Translations under genes and position numbers: made by a program | Shown: positions 25,801 to 51,932 of the stretch, in pieces | How positions within the stretch are numbered: position 1 is the stretch's first letter | Layout: the number at the start of each line of letters is the position of its first letter | Assembly (NCBI GenBank): GCA_002269645.1 | Contig: NIVC01004265.1 | Location: 1-52,455 of the forward strand | Length of the DNA: 52,455 nt | From: Macrostomum lignano | Lineage: Eukaryota | Direction of reading: 5' to 3' | The notes under the pieces: model-generated | The model's input: the letters and a program-made list of their open reading frames with translations, nothing else | The model's database searches: none | What the model was told of the DNA's origin: nothing

Positions 25801-28800
25801 TCGATGGGAAATTCAAATGAAGGCACCATTGATAATCTCCAACAGAAACCTCGATGACAACCTCAGAAGGAAAAAACCCGATGTGAATCTCTCATAAGTA
25901 AGGCAAAACCCGATGTGAATCTCTCATAAGTAAGGCAAAACCCGATGTGAATCTCTCATAAGTAAGGCAAAACCCGATGTGAATCTCTGAGTTGCAACCC
26001 GAAAAAGCCGCATTGGAAATTTGTTTCAAAGTATTTGCATTTGAATATTTGGGAAAAAAACGTATAGTGTGCCCGAAAAGGGCCGTTTTTAATAGTTTCC
26101 AGACGTTTTCACCACGAGCCAATGCTTGATTTTGTAATCAAGGGAATTCAGCCGGAAAAACTTGGCTTACGTGACTGCCGCTGGTCAGGTTGTCCATCAA
26201 GCTGTCCGGCCAGGCGACGCCGTCAACTGCGAGCTCCTCCAACGTCTGCAGGCTGGCCAGTTCGGGTGGCAAAGTTCTGAGCGGCAGCTGCGACAGCCGC
26301 AGAGTCCGCAGGTGCCGCAGGCGGCCCAGGCTGGCCGGCAGGGCGGCCATGGGGCAGCAGTCGATGGTGAGGGTCTCCAACGGACTGTCCGGCTTCCACG
26401 AATCCGGCAGGGTGGCCAGCTTCGTGGCCGAAAAGCTGAGACTCTTCAAATTCGGACAGGCGGCCGCGGCGTCAGCGGATTCCAGGTCGCATTTGGTCAC
26501 CTGCAGATTTGATGCTTTTCTAAGTTAATAGATAACTTCTGCGAGTTTTATGCTGCTAAGCTACTTCCAACTAAGTAGTATTGCTTTTTGGGAAGATGTT
26601 TACAAACCATTTCTAATACTAAAACTACTGTTTAAGTGACCTAGGATAAATTATTTGACTATAATATCAAAAATCGCTTGAAGAAGACTGAACTTAGGCA
26701 GTAGAGCCGTTAGTTTAGCATTAGCTTTCATGCCCAAAAAAACTAATGCTAAACGCAGAAATTTCATTTTGAAGTTGCTAATGTTGTCTTGTGTCCGCAC
26801 GTCACTACTTATCACCACTTGCTGTGTAAGTAGTAAGTAATAACCGGTAAACTGGTTCGATTCCACGCGCGGCCACGTTAATTTGGGGCTTGTGCGGGGG
26901 TTGCCGTGCGATGCACACCCCATGAGGGCCAACCCCCAAGGCACAGAGAGTGTACATGCCTGACGGTTAGAAAGTCAGGGCCGCTGTACACCCTGTGTGA
27001 GCGTGTGTGTGAGTGCGTGCCTGCGTACAGTGTTGGCGCACTTGCATTTGCTCAGGAGTCAGCGGGATGGGCCGAACTCAGCCCTGGTCGCAGCCCTCCC
27101 TGTGAATATTTGTGAAGCTCAGGACCGGACCGAGAACCCGGGCTGCTCACCTGCAGGCTGCGCAGGCGGCCAGTGGGCAGCTGCCCGGCCGGACCGAGGC
27201 TCCTCAACCCGGGCAGGCGGATGAGCGCCAAGGTCTCCAGGCAGGTGAGCTCCGTCAGGCTGGCCGTGTCCGTCAGCCGCGTCGAGGCCATCAGGCGAGC
27301 CGAGCGAACGCATTCGGCGTATGGCCGCAGCGCGGCGGACACCCCGCCGGCCGGGTCGGCCTCCAGCGCCTCGTCTAGCAGGCCCTCGGTCAGGCACAGC
27401 AGGTGGGCCCGGCAGGCGGCCGGGGCCAACCGGCCGGCAGCGTACAGCTTGTCCGGCTGGGTGGCTGGCGGCGGGGTCACGTAGGCCGCCATCAGCTGCT
27501 GCACCAGCTGCCGCTGCTGACTGTCCACCTCCGGTTCGCTGGAGGATGCGGCGTCGGCAGCTGCGGCGGTGGCATCTCCGGCGGCGGGGGCAGCGGCAGC
27601 AGCGGCGTGGCCAACTGAGCTGACGGAGTGCCAATGGGCTGCCGAGTAGCCGCTGAGCAGGTGCTGACGGACCGCGGCCTCGATCCACAGACGGGACTGC
27701 AGCAGCTCCTGGCTGAGGGCCGATGCAGCCGCTTCGTCGGCGTCGCCTCCCGGAGCCAGCAGCTTGTGCGACGGAATCGCCAGCTGAGGATTGCGGAGTT
27801 TTGATGGTGATTTTCATAGGCATTAAAAGTCCTTATAAGCGCCATTGTTCAACTCCTGACTTACCCGATTCCGCAGCAGTTGGCGGATAGCCGGCTGAGC
27901 GCTCTGGTGGCACTCCAGCGCTGATGTCATTGAGTGCCCGATGCCGGCGGAGTCTATGAGGTGCACCTCGGTTGGGCCTGAGGAGTGCGGTGCAGTTTTG
28001 CTGGGGTTGTACACAACGACTATCCCATCAAGACACACAACAGCCGCACAATGTCTATCCCATCAAGACACACAACAGCCGCACAATGACTATCCCATCA
28101 AGACACACAACAGCCGCACAATGACTATCCTATCAAGACACACAACAGCCGCACAATGTCTATCCCATCAAGACACACAACAGCCGCACAAAGACTATCC
28201 CATCAAGACACACAACAGCCGCACAATGACTATCCCATCAAGACACACAACAGCCGCACAATGACTATCCCATCAAGACACACAACAGTCGAACAAAGAC
28301 TATCCCATCAAGACACACAACAGCCGCACAATGACTATCCCATCAAGACACACAACAGCCGCACAATGACTATCCCATCAAGACACACAACAGCCGCACA
28401 AAGACTATCCCATCAAGACACACAACAGCCGCACAAAGACTATCCCATCAAGACACACAACAGCCGCACAAAGACTATCCCATCAAGACACACAACAGTC
28501 GAACAAAGACTATCCCATCAAGACACACAACAGCCGCACAATGACTATCCCATCAAGACACACAACAGCCGCACAATGACTATCCAATCAAGACACACAA
28601 CAGCCGCACAAAGACTATCCCATCAAGACACACAACAGCCGCACAAAGACTATCCCATCAAGACACACAACAGCCGCACAAAGACTACCCAATCAAGACA
28701 CACAACAGCCGCACAAAGACTATCCCATCAAGACACACAACAGCCGCACAAAGACTATCCAATCAAGACACACAACAGCCGCACAATGACTATCCCATCA

Positions 28801-31800
28801 AGACACACAACAGCCGCACAATGTCTATCCCATCAAGACACACAACAGCCGCACAAAGACTATCCCATCAAGACACACAACAGCCGCACAATGACTATCC
28901 TATCAAGACACACAACAGCCGCACAATGACTAGCCCAACTATTCGCTACTCACCGCTGCAGCACATCAGGTGGGCCCGCAGCTGCTCCGGCCGACCCAGC
29001 TCGGCCAGTCCCAGCCGGTGCAGTCGGCCAGGCTGCGGCAGGAACACCCACAGGAGGCCGCCGCCAACGTTGGATCTGGTAGCTCCGGACAGCAGCGAGC
29101 TGACCGTGCTGAGGCCGAGTCCGGCCACTGTCCGGTGGCGGAAGAACTGGCAAGAGTGGCCGTACAGAAACGACTCGTTGCTAATAAATTTGTGCCGCGA
29201 TTTCCGGTTCCAGTTGCCAAGCGCGTTCGGACTGGGAAATCTGGGCAGCAGGACCTCGGGATTCGCCAGCGATGCAGCTGCGGAGAATCCAAATTATGGG
29301 GCGCTGGCTTTTTTGGAATTGGCAACAATATGGTAGATTGATAATATACTCATTTTTCTTAACTACAAAACTTAAAACAGCAATGATTAATCAATTTAAC
29401 TAGAAATTAATTGTCAAATGAACCGGTAGAATGTCTTCTGGGATAGGAAAAAAGCAGTCCAACAGAGGATCAAGGATGGGACAGAAAGCAGCCCAACAAA
29501 AGATCAAGGATGGAGCAGAAAGCAGCCCTACAAAATATCAAGGATGGGACAGGCAGCAGCCCAACAAAGGATCAAGGATGGGACAGGCAGCAGCCCAACA
29601 AAGGATCAAGGATGGGACAGAAACCAGCCCAACAAAGGATCAAGGATGGGACGGAAAGCAGCCCAGCAAAGGATCAAGGATGGGACAGAAACCAGCCCAA
29701 CAAAGGATCAAGGATGGGACAGACAGCGGCTCATCGTGTCGCACTCACCGCTCATGCTGACCAGATCAGCGAGCTGAGGAGACTCCAGATTAGCGGAGTC
29801 CAGCTTCACTTTGGTGGCGCTGGCATTCAGCACGCTCAGCGACTTGATGCTGACCTCCTTGTCGTCGACTTCGGTCACTCGGTACAGCGCCCGGTCTCCC
29901 GAGTTGCTGTTCTCAGTGTAGCGAAGCCAGTGACCCCGCTGCAGACTGCTTGAGAAGTTTAGCGCCTGATAATAAAACAAAATTATTTTGGTACAGCCAC
30001 ACATTACAGGTGAGACAGGTAGCCACACACTGGGATACAACAGGTGAGACAGGTAGCTATGCACTGGGATACAACAGGTGAGACAGGTAGCCACACACTG
30101 GGATTCAACAGGTGAGACAGGTAGCTATGCACTGGGATTCAACAGGTGAGACAGTTAGCCACACACTGGGATACAACAGGTGAGACAGGTAGCCACACAC
30201 TGGGATACAACAGTTGAGACAGGTAGCCACACACTGGGATTCAACAGGTGAGACAGGTAGCCACACACTGGGATACAACAGGTGTCTCTCACCGGAAAAT
30301 TCTCGGCCCTAACGTGCAGCGCCGCCATCGCCTTCCTGTTGAATACGAGCGACCAGCCGCGCCTCGGCACCAGCAGCCTGTTCAGCGGCACCCCGCTGTC
30401 CAGAACCTCCAGCAGGTCGCACGGGCCGCCAGCCTGCCTGGCATTCTCCTCCGTGAATGGCACCGCAAACAGCCGGCGCTGATGCTGGGAGCCGGCGGCC
30501 GCCAGCTCGCTGGGCGTCAGCAGGCGCAGCTGAACTTTGTGCCTTTGCTGCGACTCGCCGTAGCCGCTGACCACCACCTCCACCGTGTCGTGGCCCTTCA
30601 GACTCTTGTCCGCCTCCGCCATCTCAGACACCTGGCCGGAAGCGGCTGCCCGGGCAGCGGCCGCACCGTGCAGTGGCGCCAGCACCCGGATGCACACGAA
30701 GCGCTGGCCGTCTTTCCGGCTGGCGTTCACGACCAGCTCCCGCTCAGCTTTGTCGTCTTCATCCGCGTCGCTGTTCGCCTCGTCTTCCTGCTCTTTCTGT
30801 TCCCCTTTGCCGCCGCCGCCCTTCTTCTTGAATGTCAGGGCGGCCGCTTTGCCACCGCCGCCTTTGCCTTGAAACTGGGGCGCCCGCTTCTCCTCAATCG
30901 AGCCGAGCATCTCCAGCAGCGACTGCCAGGATGACTCGGACTCGCTCTGTGCCGATGCGGAATCTCCGCTGGCGGCCCTAGTAACCAGGTGGCAGCGCAC
31001 CGAGCCGCTGCTGATAACTCGAATCTGAGTCGGCTCCGAGGTGCGTAGCTCGATCATGAGCAGGCCGGAGAGCACGCCGGAGATGCCTCGGTTGCCGCCG
31101 CGGAGCCCAACCGACTGCACGTGGCAGGGCAGCTCGAGCTGCGGCCACACGCTGGCCAGCTGGTAGCGCACCGAGTCGAACGGCTCCCGCTCCTGGCCGC
31201 TGTCTTCGCTGCCGACGGCACCGGCCACAGCTGCCGAGGTCTCCGCCGCTGCGGGCCTCCAGGCGGCCGAGTCCACCAGCTGGACGATCTCCCCGGGCGA
31301 GTGCATCCCGACGCAGGCGAAGAAGCCTCCGGCGGGCGGTTCGACTGGCTCGCTGGACACCTCGACGAAATCGCCGACGCCGCGGCGATCAAGCGAGAAG
31401 ATGCAGCGCAGGCGGCCGGACACCGGCTTGAGTTGGCAGCGCACCTGACAGCCTGGCAGGGAGGACTCGGCTGAGAACGGCTCCAGCCTGCGGGTTGACT
31501 GGCCGCTGCTCAGGAAGAGGCTGCCAGGTTGAGCAAGGTAAAGAATTAGAATTCATAAAATTGAATGTCTCACTGAGTTGGAAAGTACGAATTGAGGCAG
31601 AAAATAAGGGAGAAAGACGCGACAACGGAGCAGGACGGCAAGGTGAAGTGGGTTTCGGGTGAGGGGTTTCGGGTGAGGCAGGACTGTGGTGGGTGTCAGG
31701 TGAGGCAGGATTGGAGTGGTTGTCAGGTGAGGCAGGATTGGGGTGGGTGTAAGGGTGAGGCAGGATTGGGGTGTGTGTAAGGGTGAGACAGGATTGGGGT

Positions 31801-34800
31801 GGGTGTCAGGTGAGACAGGATTAGGGTGGGTGTCAGGTGAGGCAGGATTGGAGTGGGTGTCAGGTGAGGCAGGATTGGGGTGGGTGTAAGGGTGAGGCAG
31901 GATTGGGGTGTGTGTAAGGGTGAGGCAGGATTGGGGTGTGTGTAAGGGTGAGGCAGGATTGGGGTGTGTGTAAGGGTGAGGCAGGATTGGGGTGTGTGTA
32001 AGGGTGAGGCAGGATTGGGGTGTGTGTAAGGGTGAGGCAGGATTGGAGTGGGTGTAAGGGTGAGGCAGGATTGGGGTGTGTGTAAGGGTGAGGCAGGATT
32101 GGGTGGTCAAGCCACACTGTTATCTTGTTCATTTGCTCAATAAAAACAGTATCTTTACTTTCTGTTTTTTTTCAGACAGAAAACGGATAAACGCTTAAAA
32201 AATGAAATTTAGTTGGACTAGCTGACTTACCCTCCATCGTCGCCATGGTAACCAATAGAACCAGCCCGCCAGCCCGGCTGCGAAGTTGTGTGATAGCCGA
32301 ATGGGACGAGGCCGATGCTGATTGTGCCCTCGGCTCCGCGGGATACGATTTCTGGTTTGTCATTTGTCAGTGTGTGTGTTGTTTTACTTAAGCAATCAAA
32401 ACAGCAGTAGACAAATTCTCATTTGAATGCTCACTGATAGTAAAGGTGTCGCTGCCTCCAGTAAGAGGACTCTGGCCAATCAGAAGGCCAACAGGCAACT
32501 GACTGCTTCTATCCCCCACGCAACTGTAGGCTAGTAGGCCCGCGTCCTGCCACAGGTAGCTGTTGGACTTGGCAGAGTAGTTGTAGCGGGGCATCTGCTC
32601 TGCTGATGACTGGGCGTCGGACAGTGATAAGTCTTCCGGCAGCTGGAAACCAATCGGGTGAGGCAGGATTGGGGTGGGTGTTGGGTGAGGTAGGATTGGG
32701 GTGGGTGTCGTGTGAGGCAGGATTGGGGTGGGTATTTGGAAAGGCAGGATTGGGGTGGGTTTTGGGTGAGGTAAGATTGGGGTGAGTGTCGGGAGAGGCA
32801 GGATTGGGGTGGATGTCGGGAGAGGCAGGATTGGGGTGGATGTCGGGAGAGGCAGGATCGGGGTGGGTGTCGTATGAGGCAGGATTGGGGTGGGTATTTG
32901 GAAAGGCAGGATTGGGGTGAGTATCGGGAGAGGCAGGATTGGGGTGGGTATTTGGAAAGGCAGGATTGGGGTGAGTGTCGGGTGAGGCAGGATTGGGGTG
33001 AGTGTCGGGAGAGGCAGGATTGGGTGGGTATTTGGAAAGGCAGGATTGGGGCGGGTGTCGGGTGAGGCAGGATTGGAGTGAGTGTCGGTCGAGGCAGGAT
33101 TGGAGTGGGTGTCAGGTGAGGCAGGATTGGGGTGGATGTCGGGAGAGGCAGGATTGGGGTGGATGTCGGGAGAGGCAGGATCAGGGTGGGTGTCGTGTGA
33201 GGCAGGATTGGGGTGGGTATTTGGAAAGGCAGGATTGGGGCGGGTGTCGTGTGAGGCAGGATTGGGGTGAGTGTCGGGTGAGGCAGGATTGGGGCGGGTG
33301 TCGTGTGAGGCAGGATTGGGGTGGGTATTTGGAAAGGCAGGATTGGGGTGGGTGTCGGGTGAGGCAGGATTGGAGTGAGTGTCGGTCGAGGCAGGATTGG
33401 GGTGAGCGTGGGGCCGTCAAGTAGAGGCAGCTGGGTCTTGCGTGGCTATGTAATAGTTGAATCTTGTACACCCAATCCGCTTACATTTGCCGGAGACAAT
33501 CTGAAGCTGATGTCAACAGAATAGTCAAGCGATTGTGGCTTCGACTTAAACTCGAGATCTATAAGTTTACAGCGATGTATTTCTATCAGTAGCAAGTAGA
33601 AATATTGTGAGCAAATTTCAAATCTGCAACCTACCCTTTTCTAGAACGTTAACTTCCGGATAGACTTGAATTAGGCCAGAAGTTGAGGTGCTGAAGACGA
33701 AAGTGGGGATAGACAAGTTTTGCATACAGCTCTGTTGCACCGATGTTTTCACTATTCGATCATAAACAAGGCCAAATTCTCACTCCTTCAGGCAGACGAT
33801 GAGCTCATCCTGAGCAATCAGCTGGTTCCGGCAGAAGGTGACCTCGGGCTTGGAAGCCGATTGCAGCGACAGCCGAGGACACAGCTCCACTGCCGGGCCC
33901 TGGAAATTATCAACTGGACAGTGTATTTTCATGGCGCAGTTTCGCTTTTCTAGCTTTCATCTTCTATGGATTTGATCTCAAAAAGCATTGGGTTTGGCCC
34001 TGAGCTTAGATATATAAATATGGAGGTCTGCGGGCACCCCGGCACAACAACAGTAGTAATAATAATGGGCAGATGTGCAACCGACAGCTCAGCCGCAGTA
34101 ATTGCGCGGCATCTGAAGGCTGCGTACGGCTGTTCAGTCCAAGGACTGGGGGTCGCCACACACCCTCAATTACCCCAGCTAATGCTGGCACCCATTTTAC
34201 AGCTGGGTGAACTGAAGCAATGCAGAGTTTAAGTGTTCCAACGTGGGTCGAGAATCGAACCCCCGACCTTACAGTCGTGAGTCCGACGCTCTGACCACTG
34301 GGCTACAACCCCCTCTTGGGCTCCATAAATTTGGAGAGTCAAATCCTCTTAAACGGCTAGCTGAGGCTGATTTTCTCCTACCTGATCGTCCAGTCGAAGC
34401 CGCCGCCTGCTCAAAGCCCGACGCAGGTCGCTGCCGCCGTCGCCGCCGGTGGACAAGTTGATGGAGCCGGGCAGCGCCCTGTTGGGGTGCACACAGGCGT
34501 GCAGCGCCCAGGCGGCGGCCACGCAGTCGGCGCAGACTCCGCAGGTGGCGCAGGCCCGCCGGACGGCCGGCTCGCACAGACAGCGGGCGACGCCGCCGAT
34601 GCCCGAGTCGATCCGATTGAAGCGGCAGGCCGGGCCGGCCCGGGCGCAGTTGCCGCACAGGACGCAGACGCTGGGGGCGTGGCCGGCCTCGGGCTGGCGG
34701 GGTCCCAGCTGTGCCGGCAGGTCAGCGACCGATTCTCTGAGATCCCGAAAAAATTGAGAGTTGGATTAAGTGGATTTTGAATAACAGAGGTTGATGGATT

Positions 34801-37952: not shown

Positions 37953-40900
37953 GCAACAACAACAGCAGCAACAACAACAACAGCAACAACAACAGCAACA
38001 ACCACAACAGCAACAACAGCAGCAGCAACAACAACAACAACAACAACAGCAACAACAACAGCAGCAACAACAACAACAGCAACAACCACAACAGCAACAA
38101 CAACAACAGCAACAACCACAACAACAGCAGCAACAACAACAACAGCAACAACAACAGCAACAACCACAACAGCAACAACAGCAGCAACAACAGCAGCAAC
38201 AACAACAACAACAACAACAACAACAGCAACAACAACAACAGCAACAACCACAACAGCAACAACAACAACAGCAACAACCACAACAGCAACAAGGCGACAG
38301 TACAGTTCAGAAAAGGCGGTGCCAGATCAGGCACAGAAGCTTATGGATTCAATATGGCACAGAAGATGAGGGACTCGATAAGGCAGAGAAGTTGAGAGAC
38401 TCAATTAGGTATTCAATAGATGAGATAAAGCATTTGGGAGGCCATAAAATGAAACACGCAGGCTAACCGGGTTCGCCGCTCTCCTCCTTCTCGCCATCCG
38501 CAGAGGACTGAACCTGGACACCGAGACAGCCCTGTCTCAGCAGCAGGGCGTCCAGCGCATCGGTGAACAGGTGCAGCGCCGACCACAGCAGCTGCCTGGT
38601 GGACGCCCGCTGCGCCGACGACATTTTGCCAGAGGCAGCGGCCACAGGCAGCCAAGCCGTGAGGTGCAGCTCTCCGTTCCTGCCGTCTGCGCCAGCTCCA
38701 TCCTCGCCGCCGCTTTTAGTCACGTGAGCAACGACAATCTCGACGCCCCAGAGGCTGCGAACAAAGCCGGAGGCTGAGCAGCGGCACAGCTGGCCGAGCC
38801 GGCTGGTCAGGCCGAACAGGGCGGGCAGGGCGCGCTCAACCGGCCGGACAATGCCTCGGTAGACTCGGTAGGCAGCTGGCTCGCTACCGGCTGGCAGCTG
38901 GGCGTGGGTGAACAGCGGCCAGTCCAGGGCTTTCCGGCGGCCGGCAGCGCAGTACAGATTCGTGTAGAACAGGCGCTCGTCTTCGGCGCTGCGACGCAGA
39001 GGCGCCAGAGGGACCAGGGCGCCGGAGTCGGCCAGGATGCGGCGCAGGTGAGGCTGGGATTGGGGATGAAGGGGGGGTCAGCGCTGAAGCCTTCAAATTA
39101 TTGTAAAGGTTACTGATTTTTGCTGATTGACTGTTTCAATAGCTCCTGACTCATTCTGTATCAGCTCCTGACTCATTGTGTATCAGCTCCTGACTCATTG
39201 TGTATCAGCTCCTGACTCATTGTGTATCAGCTCCTGACTCATTGTGTATCAGCTCCTGACTCATTGTGTATCAGCTCCTGACTCATTGTGTATCAGCTCC
39301 TGACTCATTGTGTATCAGCTCCAGACTCATTGTGTATCAGCTCCTGACTCATTGTGTATCAGCTCCAGACTCACTCTGTCACAGCCCCTGACTCATTGTG
39401 TATCAGCTCCTGACTCATTCTGTATCAGCTCCTGACTCACTCTGTCACAGCTCCTGACTCATTGTGTATCAGCTCCTGACTCATTGTGTATCAGCTCCAG
39501 ACTCACTCTGTCACAGCCCCTGACTCATTGTGTATCAGCTCCTGACTCATTCTGTATCAGCTCCTGACTCATTGTGTATCAGCTCCTGACTCATTGTGTC
39601 ACAGCTCCTGACTCACTCTGTATCAGCTCCTGACTCATTGTGTCACAGCTCCTGACTCATTCATTATCAGCTCCCGACTTATTCTGAAAAGTCATAATTT
39701 TTTTATTTCACCCGAGTGCTGGCTATGAATATATAGATATAGATATAACAAATCGCTCTATTTTAGATTACCGATATGTAGTGCATGTTCTATTATCAAG
39801 GTAAAATTTTAATTAGAATACGAATTGATTCGATAAAAAGATCGACCATTTTAAAGCAACATTCTCAACAAAATTGTCGATCCAAAACAGTTCAACGCTG
39901 ACCTCTTCGGCTGAGGTCACTCCAGCGGCTTTAAGTGCCTGGGCCAGGGTGGCTTCGCTCCACACACCAGCGTCCGGCTCGAGTCCGGGTAGCAACGACC
40001 CAGCAACCAGGGGCGGATCGAAGGGCAGCGATTCGAGCAGGTCGAAGAACCACGGCAGGTCGGTGACGATTAGGCTCAGGTGGCGGAGAAATATTAGCGA
40101 GCCCTGCGGAGTTCAGGTAGATGGGGGTGGCGGGGTAGATTTCGTACATAACAGCCACTGACACTATCACAGTCAGTGACTCATTTTTAAATGTCGCCTG
40201 ACTCACTCTATATCAGCTCCTGACTCACTCTGTCACAGCTCCTGACTCACTCTGTCACAGCTCCTGACTCACTTTGTAGCAGCTCCTGACTCACTCTGTA
40301 GCAGCTCCTGACTCACTCTGTCACAGCTCCTGACTCACTCTGTCACAGCTCCTGACTCACTTTGTAGCAGCTCCTGACTCACTCTGTAGCAGCTCCTGAC
40401 TCACTCTGTCACAGCTCCTGACTCACTCTGTCACAGCTCCTGACTCACTTTGTCACAGCTTCTGACTCACTCTGTCACAGCTCCTGACTCACTCTGTCAC
40501 AGCTCCTGACTCACTTTGTCACAGCTCCTGACTCATTCTGTCACAGCTCCTGACTCACTCTGTCACAGCTCCTGACTCACTCTGTCACAGCTCCTGACTT
40601 ATTCTGTCACAGCTCCTGACTCACTCTATCACAGCTCCTGACTCACTCTGTCACAGCTCCTGACTCACTCTGTCACAGCTCCTGACTCACTCTGTCACAG
40701 CTCCTGACTCATTCTGTCACAGCTCCTAACTCACTCTGTCACAGCTCCTGACTCATTCTGTCACAGCTCCTAACTCACTCTGTCACAGCTCCTGACTCAT
40801 TCTGTCACAGCTCCTAACTCACCCTCTCATGCAGCCACTGCAGCGCCTCCACCAGCTGCCGCCTGCCGAACTTCTCGTCCGCCTCTTTCAGGCAGTCCAA

Positions 40901-43900
40901 TGCGCAGATTCGGCCCCGCCCGCTGCCCTCAGTGGCCGCCTTCAGCGCCTCCTTGACGTGGCGAATTCGCCACAGCCGGTCGGGCAGCAGCGCCTCCACT
41001 GCCGCCTGCGACGTGGCCGCCAGAGCCACCCGGAGCTCGGGCAGCTGGTCGGTGCCAAACAGCTCGAGATCGTCGCCGATTCGCGTCTCCAGGTAGGCCT
41101 GGATGCGCTCGGCCGTGCCGGACAGCTCCGACCAGCGCAGCTGGCGCAGAAACTCGCCGCCGCCTCCGCCGCCGCTTTCAGCCAGTCGTTTCTCCTCGAC
41201 CTCCAGGCTGGCCGTCGCCTGATCGCGGACCCGCTTCAGCTCGGCCGCGACGCCTTCTCGAATGCGAGCCGCTGTCGAACTGGCGGCGGACGACGACGAT
41301 GACATTCGATGGCAGAGGACGCGGAACGGCGGCGTGTGCAGCGGCGTCCCGACAGACGGGTCGCTTTCAACAGCAGCAGAAGACGTCGCCTCGGCCCCGG
41401 CTGAGACCTTGGACTTCGCCAAGTCGGGCACCGGGGGCCGCCACCGACGCTGGAGTAGACGGGGCTGGCCGAATCCGGCAGCAGGTAGAAGCCCACGTCG
41501 TCCGCCTTGCCTTTGGCGCAGCTGGCGTAGCCGAACACGCCTTCGTGCACCGTCTGCGACACCTTGCCCTTCTTTTGGACTGAGCCGCCGCGGGACAGCG
41601 CCGAGGACTTCACGATGAACTGGTGCACCGTGGCCTTGTTTAGCACGATGTTCACCATGTTTGATTCGCCGCTGAGGGCGCCTTTGCGCACCTCGATTGA
41701 TACAACGAAGTTGTCCTTGTCAGAGACGAACGTGTCCGTCTTCCAGGTGGCCGGGATGGACATGACTCCGTCATCCTTGACGCAGCTCAGCTTGCTGGAG
41801 AAGTTTTCGGATGGCTTTGCAGATTTTTTATTTATTGTCAAGGCCAAACCGTATCGGGATGTCAGGTCGGCGCTGACAGATCGGGGTGTCAGATCTACTG
41901 GAGAATAGCGGCTGTCAGCACTGACAGATCGGGGTGTCAGATCCACTGGAGAATAGCGGCTGTCAGCACTGACAGATCGGGGTGTCAGGCCCGCTGAAGT
42001 TAGGGGTGTCAGGCCCGCTGAAGTTAGGGGTGTCAGGCCCGCTGAAGTTAGGGGTGTCAGGCCCGCTGAAGTTAGGGGTGTCAGGCCCGCTGAAGTTAGG
42101 GGTGTCAGTCCCGCTGAAGTTAGGGGTGTCAGGCCCGCTGAAGTTAGGGGTGTCAGTCCCGCTGAAGTTAGGGATGTCAGGCCCGCTGAAGTTAGGGGTG
42201 TCAGGCCCGCTGAAGTACCGGAGGCTCCGCACTCACAATTCTTTTCCAGAGTCGCTGAACTCCAATTTTACAATCGCTCGCTCGTAGAGGTCGGAGAAGC
42301 TGTGAAATTTCTGAGAAAACTCGAACCACTTCGGATCCATTCGAATCAGGCCGACCGTGCACTCTTTGCAGTCGGCAACAACCACTGAGAACACGGAGCT
42401 GGGCTTGCGGATGTCGAGCTCATTGTTGCTAACGAACATACTGTTGCACTCTTCCATTGGGAGGCTGCGGAGTTTTTTGAATAGAGTTTGTGATTGAATG
42501 CAGCTCTGAACCGTTGACCCACAGGACTTAGATCTTGACCCACTTGACCCACGGATCCTTGAGCTTGACCCACGGATCCTAGAGCCTGACCCAAGGATCC
42601 TTGAGCTTGACCCACGGATCCTTGAGCTGGACCCAGCTGACCCACGAATCCTTGAGCTTGACCCACGGATCCTAGAGCTTGACCCACGGATCTTAGAGCT
42701 TGACCCACAGATCCTAGAGCTTGACCCACGGATCCTAGAGCTTGACCCACTTGACCCACGGATCCTTGAGCTTGACCCACTTGACCCATGGATCCTTGAG
42801 CTTGACCCACGGATCCTAGAGCTTGACCCACGGATCCTTGAGCTTGACCCACTTGACCCATGGATCCTTGAGCTTGACCCACGGATCCTAGAGCTTGACC
42901 CACGGATCCTAGAGCTTGACCCACAGATCCTAGAGCTCGACCCACGGATCCTAGAGCTTGACCCACAGATCCTAGAGCTTGACCCACGGATCCTAAAGCA
43001 TGATCCATGGATCCTAGAGCTTGACCCACTTGACCCACGGATCCTAGAGCTTGACCCACGGATCCTAGAGCTTGACCCACTTGACCCACGGATCCTTGAG
43101 CCTGACCCACGGATCCTAATGTATGACCCATGGAGCTTAAAAAGTTAAGAAAAGAACTTGGAGCTTGACTTAAACAGTTAAAGTAGGTCTTTGATCCATT
43201 TGTCTACTCACATCCATTTTTCCACTTGCTTCACTCCGACATGATGATACTCGGGGCCCTTCACCATCTCGATCTTGTCGTCGGCCTCGACATCGGCGCC
43301 ACCTTTTCGGTCCACCTTTGGCTTGTCGGGAATGTTGGGAATGCTCGCGTCTGAAGCCGTGGCGAGCTTGCGTCTGGTTGCCGGGTCTGGCTGCTTCAGC
43401 ACAGGGTTCGCCTGGGGACAAGTTTGAGTTGGTGCTATCCATTTGCCTAGTAGTGCTCATGCCTAACTTGTCTACTCTCAGTCTACCCTACCTACTCTCA
43501 GTCTACCCTACCTACCCTCAGTCTACCCTACCTACTCTCAGTCTACCCTACCTACTCTCAGTCTTCCCTACCTACCCTCAGTCTACCCTATCTACTCTCA
43601 GTCTATCCTACCTACTCCCAGTCTATCTTATGTACTCTCAGTCTACCCTACCTACTCTCAGTCTACCCTACCTACTCTCAGTCTACCCTACCTACTCTCA
43701 GTGTACCCTACCTACTCTCAGTGTACCCTACCTACTCTCAGTCTACCCTACCTACTCTCAGTCTACCCTACCTACTCTCAGTCTACCCTACCTACTCTCA
43801 GTCTACCCTACCTACTCTCAGTCTACCCTACCTACTCTCAGTCTTCCCTACCTACCCTCAGTCTACCCTACCTACTCTCAGTCTATCCTACCTACTCCCA

Positions 43901-46489
43901 GTCTATCTTATGTACTCTCAGTCTACCCTACCTACTCTCAGTCTACCCTACCTACTCTCAGTCTACCCTACCTACTCTCAGTGTACCCTACCTACTCTCA
44001 GTCTACCCTACCTACTCTCAGTGCACCCTACCTACTCTCAGTCTACCCTACCTACTCTCAGTCTACCCTACCTACTCCCAGTCTATCTTATGTACTCTCA
44101 GTCTACCCTACCTACTCTCAGTCTACCCTACCTACTTTCAGTCTACCCTACCTACTCTCAGTGTACCCTACCTACTCTCAGTGTACCCTACCTACTCTCA
44201 GTCTACCCTACCTACTCTCAGTCTACCCTACCTACTCTCAGTCTACCCTACCTACTCTCAGTCTACCCTACCTACTCTCAGTCTACCCTACCTACTCTCA
44301 GTGCACCCTACCTACTCTCAGTCTGCACTTAAGTCCCAAACGCCTCACCTTAGACAGGTAGGTCACCAGCGTCTCGGCTATGTGCCCAACAGCTCTATCG
44401 AAGTCGTTGAGCACCACAATCACAACCTGGTCCGGCTGGCTTGGAAAGTACTGCAGGTTGTAGGCCTGTAGATAGATTGTGGCAATGGAGTTTTTGTCTT
44501 GATGAGTGGGGAAATGGGCAGCCCGGGCCATGAAGTGTTTATTGTTAGCGTCTATGGTTGAGTGTTTATGGCTTAGTGTTTATCATTTTGCGTTTATGAC
44601 TGAATGTTTATGGTTGAATATTTATGGTTGAATGTTTATGGTTGAATGTTTATGGTTGGATGTTTATAGTTGGATGTTTATGGTTGGATGTTTATGGTTG
44701 GATGTTTATGGTTGGATATTTATGGTTGAATGTTTATGGTTGGATGTTTATGGTTGAATGTTTATGGTTGAATGTTTATTGTTGGATGTTTACGGTTGAA
44801 TGTTTACGGTTGGATGTTTATGGTTGAATGTTTATGGTTGGATGTTTATGGTTGAATGTTTATGGTTGGATGTTTATGGTTGAATGTTTATGGTTGAATG
44901 TTTATGGTTGAATGTTTATGGTTGAATGTTTATGGTTGAATGTTTATGGTTGAATGTTTATGGTTGAATGTTTATGGTTGAATGTTTATGGTTGAATGTT
45001 TATGGTTGAATGTTTATGGTTGAATGTTTATGGTTGAATGTTTATGGTTGAATGTTTATGGTTGAATGTTTATGGTTGAATGTTTATGGTTGAATGTTTA
45101 TGGTTGAATGTTTATGGTTGAATGTTTATGGTTGAATGTTTATGGTTGAATGTTTATGGTTGAATGTTTATGGTTGAATGTTTATGGTTAGATATTTATC
45201 TTTTTGTGTTTATGGCAAAGTTTTCATGAATTAAAGCTTCAGTACAATGCTATTAACTGAGGGCTTATTGACAGCAGTCAATGATTGACTGTTTTTTTCA
45301 CATTTTTGCGCGAGTACTTATTGGTGCATTTTTGTCGTTTAGTGTTTACAGAAATGGTTTACTGAATGAAATCTCGCTTCTTTTGAAATATTTTAACAAT
45401 TGATTATATATCCATTCTGTCTAATTTACAGTTTACTTGCGTGTGTGCTGCTGAGCACTCATAGACAGAGCAATATAAAAGTCAAGAGAAACTCACGGAC
45501 AAGCACAGCTCGGTCGCCACCACGTGGGCGTCGCCAACCTTCATGAATTTGTCGTCCACCGCCGCGCCCCGACCGCCGGCCGCCTTCAGCTTGCCCTCCT
45601 TCACCGCAGACATCGCGCTGAACTGAACTTCCGGCAGCGACACGAACAGCAGGCTGCTGACCGCCAGCTCCTCGGCCAGCTCTGCGAGGATAAATAATTG
45701 ACCTTCTTTGTCACCTGCGTAAGGCCTAGCCAGGGTAGATAGATAGGGTAGATAGGGTAGATAGGATAGATAGGGTAGATAGGATAGATAGGGTAGATAG
45801 GGTAGTTAGGGTAGATTGGGTAGTTAGGGTAGATTGGATAGATAGGGTAGATAGGGTAAATAGGGCAGATAGTGTTGTTAAGGTAGATAGGAAAGATATT
45901 GTAGATAAGATAGATAAGGCATATAGGGTAGATAGCGTAGTAGACGATATAAATAGGATATACAGGGTAGATTGGATAGATAGGGTAGATACGGCAGTGA
46001 CAAGATAAGTAGAAATGGGAGGTAGATAGATTTGGAGGGCAAGAGAGTGGTAGATAGGCTAATTTTGCCCACCCACCTTTGTTCTTCTTCAAGTCATCAT
46101 CGTCCATTTTATCGGCAATGTCCGTCTTGACCACGGAAGCGCTGGAGAAAGTCCGGAACAGGTGCGCTATGGAATTCTTGGTGATGGCGGGGCAGTGCTG
46201 CAGGTCGATGTTCATCTGGACTTTCTGTTGGTGCAGTGAAGGTGTGTCGTTTTACTACACTCTTCTACTAATAGTAGCACCATATATAGACGGTATTTTT
46301 TAAACAGGATACAAACCTTAATCTTCTCCGGATCCTTTCTCTCTTTTTCAAAGGCTTCGCACAGCCAACGGATGCCCTGGTCGGTGATGTAGGCCTCGCC
46401 GCGAAATGACAGTTGGAAAAATTGCGCTGAATCCTTCTTGGCCTGGGTTCGGGTTAGAGCAGGGTGGTTAGCTAGTAGTAGTATTGACA

Positions 46490-46852: not shown

Positions 46853-47448
46853 CATTCTACACTCACCAGCTCCTTGGCGAAGCTCTTCAACGTCATGTCC
46901 GTCCACAACGATGTCCACAGCGGCAGGGTGTTGTCGAATTCCCCCGGCCCATCCGAGCAGCAGAGAATCTGGCTGTCGGAGCGCTGCTTCAACAAACTGT
47001 CGAACTTGCCCTTTTGTGTTGATTAAAACTTGGATTATTATGCTTGACTGAAGCTTGAAATATCCCAACCCTTGGTAATTTTAACCGAAAAACTTAAACG
47101 GCAACATATACTACTCACATCGAGTGCGTTTCTCTCCAGTTGAAGGCGGCTGTAGGCATTTCGAATAGCCTGCGAATTTTTCGTGCTCAACTGGCTCTGC
47201 GGACCGGCGGCGACCTCGTCGCGACGTCGTCGATTAGGACGCACCAAGTTGTTGGAGAACAGATTCTTCTGCTGCTCCTCCTCATCCGAGTCCGGAGTCT
47301 CCGAGCCAGTTTCTGTCTCAGTTTTCTCTTCCTCTGAGAAGTGACTAGTGGTCTGCTGTTGCAGCATCTGCTCCTGCTGCACCTGCTGCTGAATGGGAAA
47401 AAGATTCGGCGGCGCGGCTTTCCTGGCTGTCTGCTTTGTTCGAGCCAT
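13810..47448 (-). CDS. Giant ROCO-family protein (~3,740 aa, 35 exons): H3-tail mimic, LRR, degenerate Roc-COR, Cys-rich motif, SPRY, LRRs, Roc GTPase, COR, two TIR, CaaX
   Basis: Hand-spliced exons, all GT-AG and phase-compatible: 47119-47448, 46867-47010, 46317-46442, 46077-46224, 45497-45681, 44349-44465, 43212-43411, 42237-42464, 40823-41794, 39903-40103, 38468-39053, 34382-34736, 33784-33899, 33635-33690, 33485-33582, 32435-32642, 32231-32351, 30293-31520, 29749-29965, 28954-29277, 27865-27977, 27151-27783, 26171-26500, 25216-25722, 23023-23403, 22149-22583, 20904-21065, 20606-20802, 20017-20505, 19308-19815, 17367-17917, 17096-17128, 16627-17005, 14430-14707, 13810-14073. Three 1-nt deletions must be corrected (~41435, ~34700, ~17741). 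A few acceptor choices (e.g. 44465, 41794) are best guesses. Confidence 0.85.
14082..14402. repeat. 28-bp intronic minisatellite (TGAGCTGAGATCCCGGTGTGAGATTGCA)n
   Basis: Fills almost the whole last intron of the ROCO gene. Confidence 0.95.
14755..14870. repeat. Short ~20-bp degenerate tandem repeat
   Basis: GAGAGTCTGTGAGGGGCCA-like units. Confidence 0.75.
15300..16620. repeat. 20-bp intronic minisatellite (CACTGAGTCAGCAGTGAAGG)n
   Basis: Directly visible; two interleaved variants. Confidence 0.97.
17235..17340. repeat. 30-bp tandem repeat, 3-4 copies
   Basis: CACCCATCAAAGCTGAGTGTACCTGTCAAT. Confidence 0.85.
17367..20120 (-). CDS. ROCO gene exons encoding two tandem TIR (TIR_2-like) domains plus a coiled/basic segment
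   Basis: KDVFISYCWANS..LQEKGIHCWLD..SLFEDISDGLRQCSVVLAFASNEYQRSANCMMEF, preceded by a more degenerate copy (DCKVLLVFLSKAFADDEACRGMF). Confidence 0.88.
17975..19265. repeat. 10-bp intronic minisatellite (CAACACCATC/CAACACCACC)n splitting the second TIR domain
   Basis: Directly visible. Confidence 0.97.
19850..20005. repeat. 52-bp tandem repeat, about 3 copies, filling an intron
   Basis: GAGACTGGAGCACTGGTCTTATGCCTGAGACAGGGAAACTGGGCTTGTGTCC. Confidence 0.9.
20017..22583 (-). CDS. ROCO gene exons encoding the Roc C-terminus and COR domain (4 exons)
   Basis: AVNFLNDIGSIQYF..KVVINPKWIVDVM; EAFDLTYP..VPCLLP; YQFEYLPAGLFNRAQVRL; IRDVIDGLIKETFQGV..CPEC. Confidence 0.93.
21110..22040. repeat. 46-bp intronic minisatellite
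   Basis: GGGTGCGTGTACATTGGGGCTGAGAGCGACTGTTGATGATTGGTCA. Confidence 0.96.
22735..22990. repeat. ~21-bp intronic minisatellite (TAAGACGTCGATAGGGTCGAT)n
   Basis: Directly visible. Confidence 0.9.
23023..23403 (-). CDS. ROCO gene exon encoding the intact Roc GTPase core
   Basis: G1 GLGGVGKTS, G2 ITDGID, G3 WDFAGQ, HQFFLTHRAVYLL, G4 VGTHSD: canonical Roc motifs. Confidence 0.96.
23450..25150. repeat. GT-rich 14/15-bp intronic minisatellite (GGATTGGGGTTGTT / GCATTGGGGTTGTT)n
   Basis: Directly visible; source of the QQPQSNNPN and GLLDWGCWI ORFs. Confidence 0.97.
25216..27300 (-). CDS. ROCO gene exons encoding the LRR array preceding Roc
   Basis: LxxLxL repeats, e.g. LRHLRTLRLSQLPLRTLP and LTNLKTLQLNYQAIRRIP, and the Roc-proximal LRTPPLEVVQRGSAALLSYL. 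Confidence 0.93.
25870..25985. repeat. 32-bp tandem repeat, about 3.5 copies
   Basis: AAAACCCGATGTGAATCTCTCATAAGTAAGGC. Confidence 0.85.
28015..28930. repeat. 35-bp intronic minisatellite
   Basis: GACTATCCCATCAAGACACACAACAGCCGCACAAT. Confidence 0.97.
29440..29725. repeat. 34-bp intronic minisatellite
   Basis: CAAAGGATCAAGGATGGGACAGAAACCAGCCCAA. Confidence 0.92.
30005..30285. repeat. 34-bp intronic minisatellite
   Basis: CAACAGGTGAGACAGGTAGCCACACACTGGGATA. Confidence 0.93.
31250..32642 (-). CDS. ROCO gene exons encoding a SPRY domain (SPRYD3/RanBP9-like)
   Basis: Spliced sequence VGLLIGQSPL..FTIKIVSRGAEGTISIGLVPFGYHTTSQPGWRAGSIGYHGDDGGLF..GFFACVGMHSPGEIVQL. Confidence 0.88.
31660..32105. 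repeat. G-rich ~27-bp intronic minisatellite (GTGAGGCAGGATTGGGGTGGGTGT..)
   Basis: Directly visible; same family as 32655-33410. Confidence 0.94.
32655..33410. repeat. G-rich ~27-bp intronic minisatellite, same family as 31660-32105
   Basis: Shared core GAGGCAGGATTGGGGTG. Confidence 0.94.
34045..34313 (-). mobile_element. tRNA-derived SINE with a CORE/Meta-like central domain and (ATT)n-type tail
   Basis: Minus strand: A box TAGCCCAGTGG, B box GGTTCGATTC, then CACTTAAACTC..TGCTTCAGTTCACCCAGCTGTAAAATGGG (resembles the CORE-SINE consensus), ending ATTATTATTACTACT. tRNA stems are imperfect and no TSD is evident. Confidence 0.62.
34790..37700. repeat. ~102/106-bp satellite built of four diverged ~26-bp monomers, with higher-order periodicity
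   Basis: About 28 units; identical variant patterns recur 823 bp apart. Confidence 0.96.
37755..38292. repeat. (CAA/CAG/CAC)n trinucleotide microsatellite
   Basis: Directly visible; intronic. Confidence 0.97.
39140..39680. repeat. 22-bp intronic minisatellite (CAGCTCCTGACTCATTGTGTAT)n
   Basis: Directly visible; same family as 40195-40815. Confidence 0.95.
40195..40815. repeat. 22-bp intronic minisatellite (CAGCTCCTGACTCACTCTGTCA)n
   Basis: Directly visible; contains GTGAGT on the gene strand. Confidence 0.96.
41865..42215. repeat. 24-bp intronic minisatellite (GGGGTGTCAGGCCCGCTGAAGTTA)n plus a related longer unit
   Basis: Directly visible. Confidence 0.93.
42520..43135. repeat. 21-bp intronic minisatellite (GAGCTTGACCCACGGATCCTA)n
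   Basis: Directly visible. Confidence 0.95.
43470..44330. repeat. 20-bp intronic minisatellite (CAGTCTACCCTACCTACTCT)n
   Basis: Directly visible. Confidence 0.97.
44560..45190. repeat. 14-bp intronic minisatellite (TTTATGGTTGAATG)n
   Basis: Directly visible. Confidence 0.96.
45735..46000. repeat. 9-bp degenerate repeat (GATAGGGTA)n
   Basis: Directly visible; intronic. Confidence 0.88.
46475..46852. repeat. (AGT)n microsatellite
   Basis: Directly visible; intronic. Confidence 0.97.
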
Positions 47449-51862: not shown

Positions 51863-51932
51863 GTAAGCTTACGTATTCTTGCCGTTTTTAACTTTAGAAT
51901 TGCCTGACTGATGATTTACTGTCACAAAGGAG

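What the first reader, a model, noticed from the sequence alone, without database searches (positions are those of the whole stretch)
38468..45681. Second, degenerate N-terminal Roc-COR unit: a tandem pseudo-ROCO/ROCO architecture
Seen after splicing: the N-terminal part mirrors the intact unit. LLFVSLPEVQFSAMSAV aligns with LMFVGLGGVGKTSLLRAL but lacks the P-loop GK. AYNLQYFPSQPDQVVIVVLN aligns with YNTHQFFLTHRAVYLLLY. LVEALQWLHERGSLIFLRHLSLIVTDLPWFFDLL aligns with VRQAVNFLNDIGSIQYF..VVINPKWIVDVM. LHLFTDALDALLLRQGCLGV aligns with FMIRDVIDGLIKETFQGV. It is preceded by RNI-like LRR motifs (YITDQGIRWL, LQHCPAITKNSI). Known: Roc-COR units work as dimers. Inference: an ancient LRR-Roc-COR duplication left a pseudo-GTPase that could pair intramolecularly with the active unit. 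I do not know of this architecture among described ROCO proteins.
Basis: partly seen in the sequence, partly recalled or inferred. Interest (0 to 1): 0.78.

Follow-up and report, generated by a model that had tools for sequence, protein, structure and literature searches.

The report
Extra dead COR module in flatworm ROCO
A giant flatworm (Macrostomum-type) gene that ends in a normal LRR-Roc-COR-TIR switch also carries, far upstream, a very diverged second COR-A domain with no GTP-binding motifs; the proposed dead Roc GTPase next to it cannot be shown.

Summary
All quoted peptides exist on the minus strand as exons of a large gene. The only relatives found are Macrostomum lignano fragments, one unnamed sequencing-run contig and one metagenome contig.

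The downstream unit is a textbook LRR-Roc-COR-A-COR-B-TIR by Pfam. The N-terminal region gets no Pfam, BLASTP or PDB-sequence hit.

The best is reached by 5.5% of shuffles.

A four-sequence family profile of the N-terminal region matches a 50-sequence Roc-COR profile. Over the whole stretch the probability is 92% (E=5e-7). For COR-A alone it is 95% (E=1.7e-8, 114 columns). The reverse HMM search agrees.

The Roc-like first half and the COR-B-like part score at chance on their own. No P-loop exists here or in the homologs, and about 400 unrelated residues separate the "Roc" half from COR-A.

AlphaFold models were too poor to use (pLDDT 33 and 39).

A diverged homolog has COR-like, finger and SPRY in one reading frame, so a single long protein is likely.

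Verdict: a second, P-loop-less COR-A module is real. A full pseudo-Roc-COR unit is plausible but unproven.

The parts
47119..47448 (-). Exon A: predicted start (MARTKQTARK...) and a low-complexity acidic/Gln stretch
   Evidence: ORF and splice scan. Part of it is in UniProt fragment P0001.
46867..47010 (-). Exon B (..PLWTSLWTDMTLKSFAKEL), conserved in homolog P0094
46317..46442 (-). Exon C: first Cys-containing-LRR-like motif (YITDQGIRWLCEAF)
   Evidence: No Pfam LRR hit.
46077..46224 (-). Exon D: second LRR-like motif (LQHCPAITKNSIAHLF)
45497..45681 (-). Exon E: proposed pseudo-Roc strand 1 and 'P-loop' position (LLFVSLPEVQFS), with no GK[ST]
   Evidence: Sequence read directly. The homolog reads LLFLTPSEIQFS. 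hhalign against Roc gives E=0.33.
44349..44465 (-). Exon F: the most conserved block of the first half (AYNLQYFPSQPDQVVIVVLNDFDRAVGHIAETLVTYLSK); proposed switch II, strand 4 and helix 3 remnant
   Evidence: Conservation across paralogs. Similarity to Roc is not significant.
41437..43411 (-). Exons G (43411-43212), H (42464-42237) and I (41872-about 41437): lineage-specific linker and beta-rich insert of unknown fold
   Evidence: Comparison with the downstream SPRY gives E=0.8. No Pfam hit.
41430..41442 (-). Frame problem: coding sense moves from frame 0 to frame 2 at a C5 run. This is an assembly indel, a very short intron or a real frameshift.
   Evidence: Paralog P0101 is in frame across the equivalent stretch.
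40823..41434 (-). Exon J: predicted long helices, then a weak Roc helix-5-like motif (ELFGTDQLPELRVAL), then the first part of COR-A up to LVEALQWLHER
   Evidence: hhalign. Piece 690-800 against the Roc C-terminus gives E=0.017.
39861..40103 (-). Exon K: COR-A winged-helix hairpin (GSLIFLRHLSLIVTDLPWFFDLL) and the following COR-A part
   Evidence: hhalign against COR-A: probability 95.4%, E=1.7e-8, 114 columns. Reverse hmmsearch hits the COR-A of many ROCO proteins. The intron position is conserved in L001.
38466..39053 (-). Exon L: end of COR-A and the COR-B-like segment (..YRVYRGIV..LTSRLGQL..LHLFTDALDALLLRQGCLGV)
   Evidence: Colinear in the full hhalign alignment but adds no score of its own. 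AlphaFold of homolog P0095 has pLDDT 50-63 there, with strand-helix-strands-long helix. Foldseek puts the C. tepidum COR domain at rank 5, E=0.023, not significant.
38463..38468 (-). TAG stop (38465-38463) inside a possible donor G|GTTAGC. Splicing here removes the stop.
   Evidence: UniProt models P0002 and P0004 use this donor. Homolog L001 has no stop here.
34382..34736 (-). Linker and Cys-rich finger exon (..SVCVLCGNC..CLC..CATCGVCADC..HACVH). A 1-nt frame problem at a C run near 34690 can be avoided by the alternative acceptor at 34693.
   Evidence: No Pfam hit.
33784..33899 (-). Short exon before the SPRY domain (GPAVELCPRL..VCLK)
   Evidence: Present in P0004. The equivalent follows the finger in P0095.
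32231..32386 (-). SPRY domain, first half (..PGWRAGSIGYHGDDG), with a perfect donor GTAAGT
   Evidence: Pfam SPRY is sub-threshold: E=0.022 here and E=0.0011 in L001.
30293..31520 (-). Large exon: SPRY second half plus about 330 aa of unknown function
25216..27813 (-). Pre-LRR exon and leucine-rich-repeat exons of the intact unit
   Evidence: Pfam LRR_14, LRR_8 and LRR_4. Splice chain.
20016..23397 (-). Intact Roc (GLGGVGKTS, DFAGQ, THSD), COR-A and COR-B exons
   Evidence: Pfam Roc 74.6 bits, COR-A 86.9 bits, COR-B 95.9 bits, all above threshold. Orthologs.
17723..19875 (-). TIR domain exons (two TIR_2 matches)
   Evidence: Pfam TIR_2, E=7.5e-17 and 2e-9

Best explanation
The window holds one very large multi-exon gene on the minus strand, of Macrostomum lignano type.

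**Domain order**
1. A short LRR-like stretch.
2. A conserved segment of about 100 aa with no G motifs.
3. A lineage-specific insert of about 400 aa.
4. A highly diverged but genuine COR-A winged-helix domain.
5. A COR-B-like segment.
6. A Cys-rich finger.
7. A SPRY domain.
8. About 650 aa, of which the first 330 or so have no recognisable domain.
9. LRR.
10. An intact Roc GTPase.
11. COR-A and COR-B.
12. TIR.

**What the N-terminal module is**
I read it as the eroded remnant of a Roc-COR unit.
- COR-A is shown.
- Roc and COR-B ancestry are inferred from order, spacing and weak motifs.
- It cannot bind GTP through a P-loop.

**How it most likely works (inferred)**
- The intact Roc-COR is the GTP-controlled switch.
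- LRR and SPRY are the sensing or interaction surfaces.
- TIR is the output.
- The dead COR module is a non-catalytic scaffold. It offers a second COR surface, either to the active unit in cis or to partner molecules.
For: **COR-A homology**
- hhalign of the family alignment against the Roc-COR profile gave 82%, then 87%, then 92% probability as homologs were added.
- COR-A alone: 95.4%, E=1.7e-8.
- Shuffled and reversed controls were far lower.
- The reverse HMM hits the COR-A region of many ROCO proteins, E 1e-5 to 1e-4 in an 86-sequence database.

**Roc ancestry (weak)**
- The hhalign alignment starts in Roc helix 5 with high per-column confidence. That piece alone gives E=0.017.
The score does not rise.

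**COR-B (weak)**
- The AlphaFold model of homolog P0095 has a strand-helix-strands-long helix order, which I judge from memory to fit COR-B, at pLDDT 50-63.
- C. tepidum COR and RocCOR and LRRK2 appear at ranks 5, 46 and 44 of 350,542 chains. None is significant.

**Selection**
- Paralogs and homologs at 31-37% identity keep the same blocks.

**One gene**
- No ATG occurs between the finger exon and mid-SPRY.
- Canonical splice sites link every exon down to TIR.
- Homolog L001 encodes COR-like, finger and then SPRY with no stop.

**Intact unit**
- Confirmed by Pfam. Orthologs occur in molluscs, rotifers, an annelid and a nematode.
Against: - The Roc-like first half and the COR-B-like part score at chance on their own.
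- No G1, G3 or G4 motif is present.
- About 400 residues interrupt the supposed G domain.
- Intron positions differ between the two units.
- Both AlphaFold models are low confidence (mean pLDDT 32.6 and 39.2). Foldseek gave no hit at E<=0.001.
- The window has an in-frame TAG after exon L, a frame problem near 41436 and another near 34690.
- The donor that removes the TAG is weak (GTTAGC).
- No transcript evidence for this locus was available.
- The family alignment is shallow (4 sequences, Neff about 1.5).
Confidence: 0.55

Rival explanations
1. Only a COR-A-type winged-helix domain is present. The flanking segments are unrelated lineage-specific sequence, so there never was a second Roc or COR-B, and "pseudo-ROCO" is an over-reading.
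For: - All the statistical signal sits in COR-A.
- The Roc first-half and COR-B pieces, and their reverse HMMs, are at chance.
- The single-peptide pairs are at chance.
- The 400-aa insert and the lack of any G motif fit this reading.
Against: - To my knowledge COR-A is only known directly after Roc.
- The alignment begins inside Roc helix 5.
- Colinear register is kept over Roc and COR-B once the insert is removed.
- COR structures appear among the top Foldseek ranks for the COR-B-like part.
- The NPVL and QVVIVV blocks are conserved at the expected spacing.
Confidence: 0.3
2. There are two separate genes. The N-terminal product ends at the TAG after exon L (about 1,120 aa), and the finger-SPRY-LRR-Roc-COR-TIR protein is made from its own transcript, for example after trans-splicing at the 34736 acceptor.
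For: - An in-frame TAG lies at 38465-38463.
- UniProt model P0001 ends there.
- The bypass donors are weak (GTTAGC, GTTCAG), and the intron would be 3.7 kb of satellite.
- From memory, M. lignano uses spliced-leader trans-splicing.
Against: - No in-frame ATG occurs from the finger exon to the middle of SPRY.
- Homolog L001 reads from the COR-B-like segment into the finger in one exon with no stop, and SPRY follows.
- Models P0002 and P0004 splice across the TAG.
Confidence: 0.2
3. This copy is a decaying pseudogene or an assembly artefact, so no such protein is made from this locus.
For: - Frame problems at about 41436 and about 34690 and the TAG after exon L.
- The UniProt fragments of the same family are full of frame errors.
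Against: - Both frame problems sit in homopolymer runs, and each has an alternative splice solution.
- Every other exon is open with canonical GT-AG sites.
- The exon peptides match the independent M. lignano models, apart from those models' frame-shifted stretches.
- The family is conserved at 31-37% identity in a paralog and in two homologs of unknown species.
Confidence: 0.12
4. All similarity to Roc-COR is chance, and the N-terminal region is an unrelated novel family.
For: - No Pfam, BLASTP or PDB-sequence hit.
- The alignment is shallow.
Against: - hhalign gives E=1.7e-8 over 114 of 140 COR-A columns, against 14 other piece-by-piece comparisons with E of 0.012-0.66.
- Shuffled queries reach at most 26.5 against the real 52.
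- The probability rose as homologs were added.
- The reverse search agrees.
Confidence: 0.05

Closest known systems
Spiralian LRR-Roc-COR-TIR proteins (annotated 'pats1/roco11-like' in Haliotis, Patella and Brachionus; also Capitella and Plectus)
   Same: The C-terminal half of this gene is an ortholog-grade match. It is 43-54% identical over Roc-COR, with the same LRR, Roc, COR-A, COR-B and TIR Pfam set.
   Different: No relative of the N-terminal module was found outside Macrostomum-like sequences. There were 8 hits among 1.84 billion representatives. The database fragments are under 1,000 aa, so their own N-termini could not be inspected.
Chlorobium tepidum Roco (PDB 3dpt, 3dpu) and human LRRK2, LRRK1 and MFHAS1
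   Same: All are LRR-Roc-COR switches. COR mediates dimerisation and communicates with Roc (reviews PMC6337361, PMC6320773). The N-terminal module shares COR-A at profile level and gives weak Foldseek ranks.
   Different: These proteins have one Roc-COR per chain and pair between chains. Here a second, P-loop-less COR module sits in the same chain. There is no kinase, and the output is TIR.
Ectocarpus ROCO with a repeat array inserted in Roc between strand 5 and helix 4 (PMC3341825)
   Same: It is a precedent for a large insertion at the point where the N-terminal module would be interrupted, after the NPVL block that aligns with strand 5.
   Different: The algal Roc keeps its G motifs. Here no G motif survives, and the insert is a 400-aa non-repetitive segment.
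Pseudo-GTPase domains (for example p190RhoGAP pG1/pG2; from memory)
   Same: The concept is the same: a G-domain-derived fold that has lost nucleotide binding and serves as a scaffold.
   Different: In those cases the fold is shown by structure. Here it is not shown at all.
TRIM-type B-box plus SPRY sensors
   Same: A Cys-rich finger followed by SPRY lies between the two units.
   Different: The finger has no Pfam match and SPRY is sub-threshold. No RING or coiled coil in TRIM order was seen.

Membership tests
ROCO (Roc-COR tandem): N-terminal module | G1 P-loop GxxxxGK[ST] in Roc | tested here: not met
   The position reads LLFVSLPEVQFS. The homolog reads LLFLTPSEIQFS.
ROCO (Roc-COR tandem): N-terminal module | G3 DxxGQ and G4 [NT]KxD/THxD motifs | tested here: not met
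   No such motifs were seen in residues 250-360 or 740-790 of the model (sequence). The aligned positions read CLSAYN and NPVLKQ.
ROCO (Roc-COR tandem): N-terminal module | Ras-like Roc domain detectable by profile or fold | tested here: inconclusive
   hhalign gives E=0.33 for the first half and E=0.017 for the helix-5 piece. Pfam finds nothing. AlphaFold pLDDT is below 40 there.
ROCO (Roc-COR tandem): N-terminal module | COR-A domain | tested here: met
   hhalign gives 95.4%, E=1.7e-8, 114 of 140 columns. Controls and reverse HMM. Pfam COR-A itself does not hit.
ROCO (Roc-COR tandem): N-terminal module | COR-B domain directly after COR-A | tested here: inconclusive
   hhalign alone gives E=0.44. 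It is colinear in the full alignment. A low-confidence AlphaFold element order fits. Foldseek 3dpt_A is at rank 5, E=0.023.
ROCO (Roc-COR tandem): N-terminal module | Roc immediately followed by COR | tested here: not met
   About 400 residues (exons G to J) lie between the proposed Roc first half and COR-A.
ROCO (Roc-COR tandem): C-terminal unit of the same gene | Roc, COR-A and COR-B above Pfam thresholds, with G motifs intact | tested here: met
   Roc 74.6 bits, COR-A 86.9 bits, COR-B 95.9 bits. GLGGVGKTS, DFAGQ and THSD were read directly.
Pseudo-GTPase | G-domain fold kept while nucleotide-binding motifs are lost | tested here: inconclusive
   The motifs are lost. The fold could not be assessed: pLDDT 32.6.
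TIR-domain signalling proteins | TIR domain | tested here: met
   Pfam TIR_2, E=7.5e-17 and 2e-9, at 19.9-17.7 kb.
B30.2/SPRY | SPRY domain above the Pfam threshold | tested here: inconclusive
   15.3 bits here and 19.4 bits in L001, against a cut-off of 26.3. The PGW..GYHGDDG motif was read directly.
B-box / RING zinc fingers | Recognised Cys/His finger profile | tested here: not met
   No Pfam hit for the Cys-rich exon or for P0095. Only the Cys spacing is conserved.

The most novel reading that the evidence does not exclude
The N-terminal module is a complete dead Roc-COR whose G domain is split by an inserted domain. It docks in cis onto the live Roc-COR as an intramolecular pseudo-dimer. 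That pseudo-dimer replaces the usual homodimer and gates a TIR effector, making a single-chain version of the "GTPase activated by dimerisation" switch in an animal immune-type receptor.
Probability: 0.15. Interest if true: 0.75.

Novelty: new variant of a known kind. Interest (0 to 1): 0.45.

Why it matters
**Background.** ROCO proteins, including LRRK2, are thought to work through pairing of Roc-COR units between chains. How that pairing controls the output domain is still debated (PMC6337361, PMC5714945).

**If the reading holds.** A natural protein with one live and one dead COR-containing unit in the same chain would be a ready-made asymmetric system for asking what the COR-COR contact does. 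It would also add ROCO to the families with pseudo-enzyme partners.

**At minimum.**
- It shows that COR-A can persist without a recognisable GTPase.
- It documents a very large LRR/SPRY/ROCO/TIR receptor-like gene in a regenerative flatworm model.

**Limits.** So far the module appears confined to Macrostomum-like taxa, and the Roc part is unproven.

Tried and rejected
**Searches that gave nothing for the N-terminal region**
- Pfam scans of the rough and refined N-terminal protein, of the UniProt fragments and of the homologs.
- BLASTP against the intact unit.
- PDB sequence search with the family profile.

**Remote tools and their limits**
I used fragment alignments A3, A4 and A5 instead.
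- MAFFT scattered the short exons in A2, so that alignment was dropped.
- The third word-indexed search found no new homologs.
- A contig look-up for P0001 found nothing.

**Structure**
- AlphaFold of P0001 with A4 gave mean pLDDT 32.6. I did not use it for a fold search.
- AlphaFold of P0095 with A5 gave mean pLDDT 39.2. Foldseek on it gave no significant hit.

**Ideas tested and dropped**
- That the beta-rich insert (residues 400-690) is a second SPRY: hhalign E=0.8.
- That removing the insert would raise the score if the Roc first half were homologous: the alignment extended but the score stayed at 52.6.
- An L-INS-i alignment misplaced P0095. I replaced it with semi-global pairwise alignments.

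**Evidence I decided not to use**
- The UniProt names ("COR domain-containing protein") are not used as evidence. Sibling fragments carry unrelated names such as SHR-BD, calpain, helicase and SWIB.

Full report
**What is in the window**

The window is eukaryotic, rich in minisatellites and carries a long multi-exon gene on the minus strand. A word-indexed search with the N-terminal region returned only four fragmentary Macrostomum lignano UniProt models, P0001 to P0004. Wherever they are in frame, they match the window's exon peptides. The window is therefore M. lignano or a very close relative.

**Check of the observation**

I built an exon model from open frames and GT-AG sites:
- A: 47448-47119
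- B: 47010-46867
- C: 46442-46317
- D: 46224-46077
- E: 45681-45497
- F: 44465-44349
- G: 43411-43212
- H: 42464-42237
- I/J: 41872-40823
- K: 40103-39861
- L: 39053-38466

A TAG follows at 38465-38463.

There is one frame problem. At a C5 run near 41436 the coding sense moves from frame 0 to frame 2. Paralog P0101 is in frame there.

**The intact unit**

Pfam confirms LRR, Roc (74.6 bits), COR-A (86.9 bits), COR-B (95.9 bits) and TIR_2 in the exons between 27.8 and 17.7 kb. Relatives with the same domain set occur in molluscs, rotifers, Capitella and the nematode Plectus, at 43-54% identity.

**Is the N-terminal region Roc-COR?**

Direct methods say nothing.
- Pfam has no hit at E<=10.
- BLASTP against the intact unit gives a best E of 1.2.
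- No PDB sequence hit was found.

An HMM of 50 Roc-COR relatives (alignment A1) finds one segment, LVEALQWLHERGSLIFL, at the COR-A motif position (E=0.0016 for one sequence). hhalign with the single sequence gives 13.5% probability.

An exhaustive profile search of 1.84 billion representatives found only eight proteins. Three of them are diverged homolog fragments at 31-37% identity:
- P0094, from a sequencing-run assembly.
- P0096 and its cluster-mate P0101, an M. lignano paralog.
- P0095, from an ENA metagenome contig.

With these in the query profile, hhalign against the Roc-COR profile rose to 82% (E=1e-5, 305 columns). It rose again to 92% (E=5e-7). Sixty column shuffles reached at most 26.5 against the real 52, and the reversed query scored 15.

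Cut into pieces:
- Residues 790-935 match COR-A at 95.4%, E=1.7e-8, 114 of 140 columns.
- Residues 690-800 match the Roc C-terminus weakly (E=0.017).
- The COR-B-like piece (E=0.44) and the Roc-like first half (E=0.33) are at chance.

The reverse search agrees. The N-terminal COR-A HMM hits the COR-A of many ROCO proteins, while the other two HMMs hit nothing.

The score does not rise. This is consistent with a Roc remnant but is not evidence for one.

**Structure prediction**

The best part of the second model (pLDDT 50-63) is the COR-B-like segment. Its order is strand, helix, four strands, long helix. I judge this to fit COR-B from memory only.

Foldseek against the PDB gave no hit at E<=0.001. 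The C. tepidum COR domain (3dpt_A) was rank 5 of 350,542 chains. LRRK2 and the C. tepidum RocCOR were ranks 44 and 46. This is suggestive only.

**One gene or two?**

That is wrong in detail. The 31.5-kb exon begins with the second half of a SPRY domain. Its natural partner is the exon 32386-32231 (..PGWRAGSIGYHGDDG), which has a perfect GTAAGT donor. Upstream of that lie exon 33899-33784 and a Cys-rich finger exon, 34736-34382.

None of these exons has an in-frame ATG before mid-SPRY, so the ROCO part has no start of its own.

Exon L can reach the finger exon in two ways:
- Donor G|GTTAGC, which removes the TAG, joined to acceptor 34736. This route needs a 1-nt correction at a C run near 34690.
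- Donor CAG|GTTCAG at 38514 joined to acceptor 34693, which is in frame as it stands.

The homolog contig L001 settles the order. There, the equivalents of exons K and L and the finger form one open exon with no stop, and SPRY follows. The intron position LHER|GS is conserved.

Canonical sites link all remaining exons down to TIR. A single protein of roughly 3,000 aa or more is therefore the most likely reading. No transcript data for this locus were available.

**Interpretation**

What is shown is a second, highly diverged COR-A domain that is conserved among paralogs. It lies upstream of an intact LRR-Roc-COR-TIR, and no GTP-binding motif is anywhere near it.

What is inferred is that its flanks are eroded Roc and COR-B. 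That would make the module a dead Roc-COR whose G domain is split by an insert. An Ectocarpus ROCO has an insertion at the same place in Roc (PMC3341825).

The function as a non-catalytic COR scaffold that pairs with the live unit is speculation. It rests on the known role of COR in dimerisation (PMC6337361, PMC5714945).

**Novelty**

Three full-text searches found no description of two Roc-COR or COR units in one chain. The module itself is so far restricted to Macrostomum-like sequences. I rate it a new variant of a known kind, of moderate interest.

The COR part and the same-gene arrangement hold. The pseudo-GTPase, the LRR-inclusive duplication and the intramolecular pairing are not shown.

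Noticed in passing
window 47448-47419 (-): The predicted protein starts MARTKQTARK. After the Met, the first nine residues are identical to the histone H3 N-terminal tail (from memory). Homolog P0094 starts differently. This could be an H3-tail mimic or a captured H3 5' end.
   Followed up: no
window, introns of the minus-strand gene (e.g. 34803-37632, 43472-44324, 40197-40829, 39141-39683, 23451-25190, 21111-22043, 17979-19264): Almost every intron carries its own distinct minisatellite array, with periods of 10-102 nt and up to about 2.8 kb in length. Several of these arrays give long spurious ORFs on both strands.
   Followed up: partly
window 38463-38468 (-): The TAG that ends exon L lies inside a possible splice donor, G|GTTAGC. 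Intron retention would give a 1,120-aa short product and splicing the long one. In homolog L001 the same place is uninterrupted coding sequence, so the 3.7-kb satellite intron looks like a secondary insertion.
   Followed up: partly
window about 41436 and about 34690 (-): Two 1-nt frame problems lie in C homopolymer runs within otherwise open exons. They are either assembly indels or recent mutations. The UniProt fragments of the family show many more frame errors.
   Followed up: partly
window 34736-34382, 32386-32231 and 31520-about 31200 (-): A Cys-rich finger (conserved Cys spacing, no Pfam match) followed by a SPRY domain forms a TRIM-like pair between the COR-like module and the LRR-Roc-COR part.
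   Followed up: partly
L001 1-2869 (ENA ERZ27264358 k141_1561466): This metagenome contig from an unidentified organism (GC 47%) encodes a homolog about 31% identical, with COR-like, finger and SPRY in order. Its source organism was not determined.
   Followed up: partly
window 50274-51907 (+): A separate plus-strand gene has ankyrin repeats (Pfam Ank, E=5.6e-10; Ank_3, E=2.3e-11). The motif YYGEYPLSFAA looks TRPV-channel-like by eye.
   Followed up: partly
window 8283-9230 (-): An ORF starting MGNRDSQ has a C-terminal UBA-like domain (Pfam UBA_4, E=1.2e-6). Whether it is a separate gene or a downstream exon was not examined.
   Followed up: no
P0001-P0004, P0091, P0096, P0101 (UniProt M. lignano entries): Fragments of one protein family carry unrelated automatic names: COR, SHR-BD, calpain catalytic, helicase ATP-binding and SWIB domain-containing. 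The names cannot be trusted for this proteome.
   Followed up: no
window 19875-17723 (-): Pfam matches TIR_2 twice, one match in the 19.9-19.3 kb exon and one across the 10-nt-period satellite intron. This suggests two tandem TIR domains after COR-B.
   Followed up: partly
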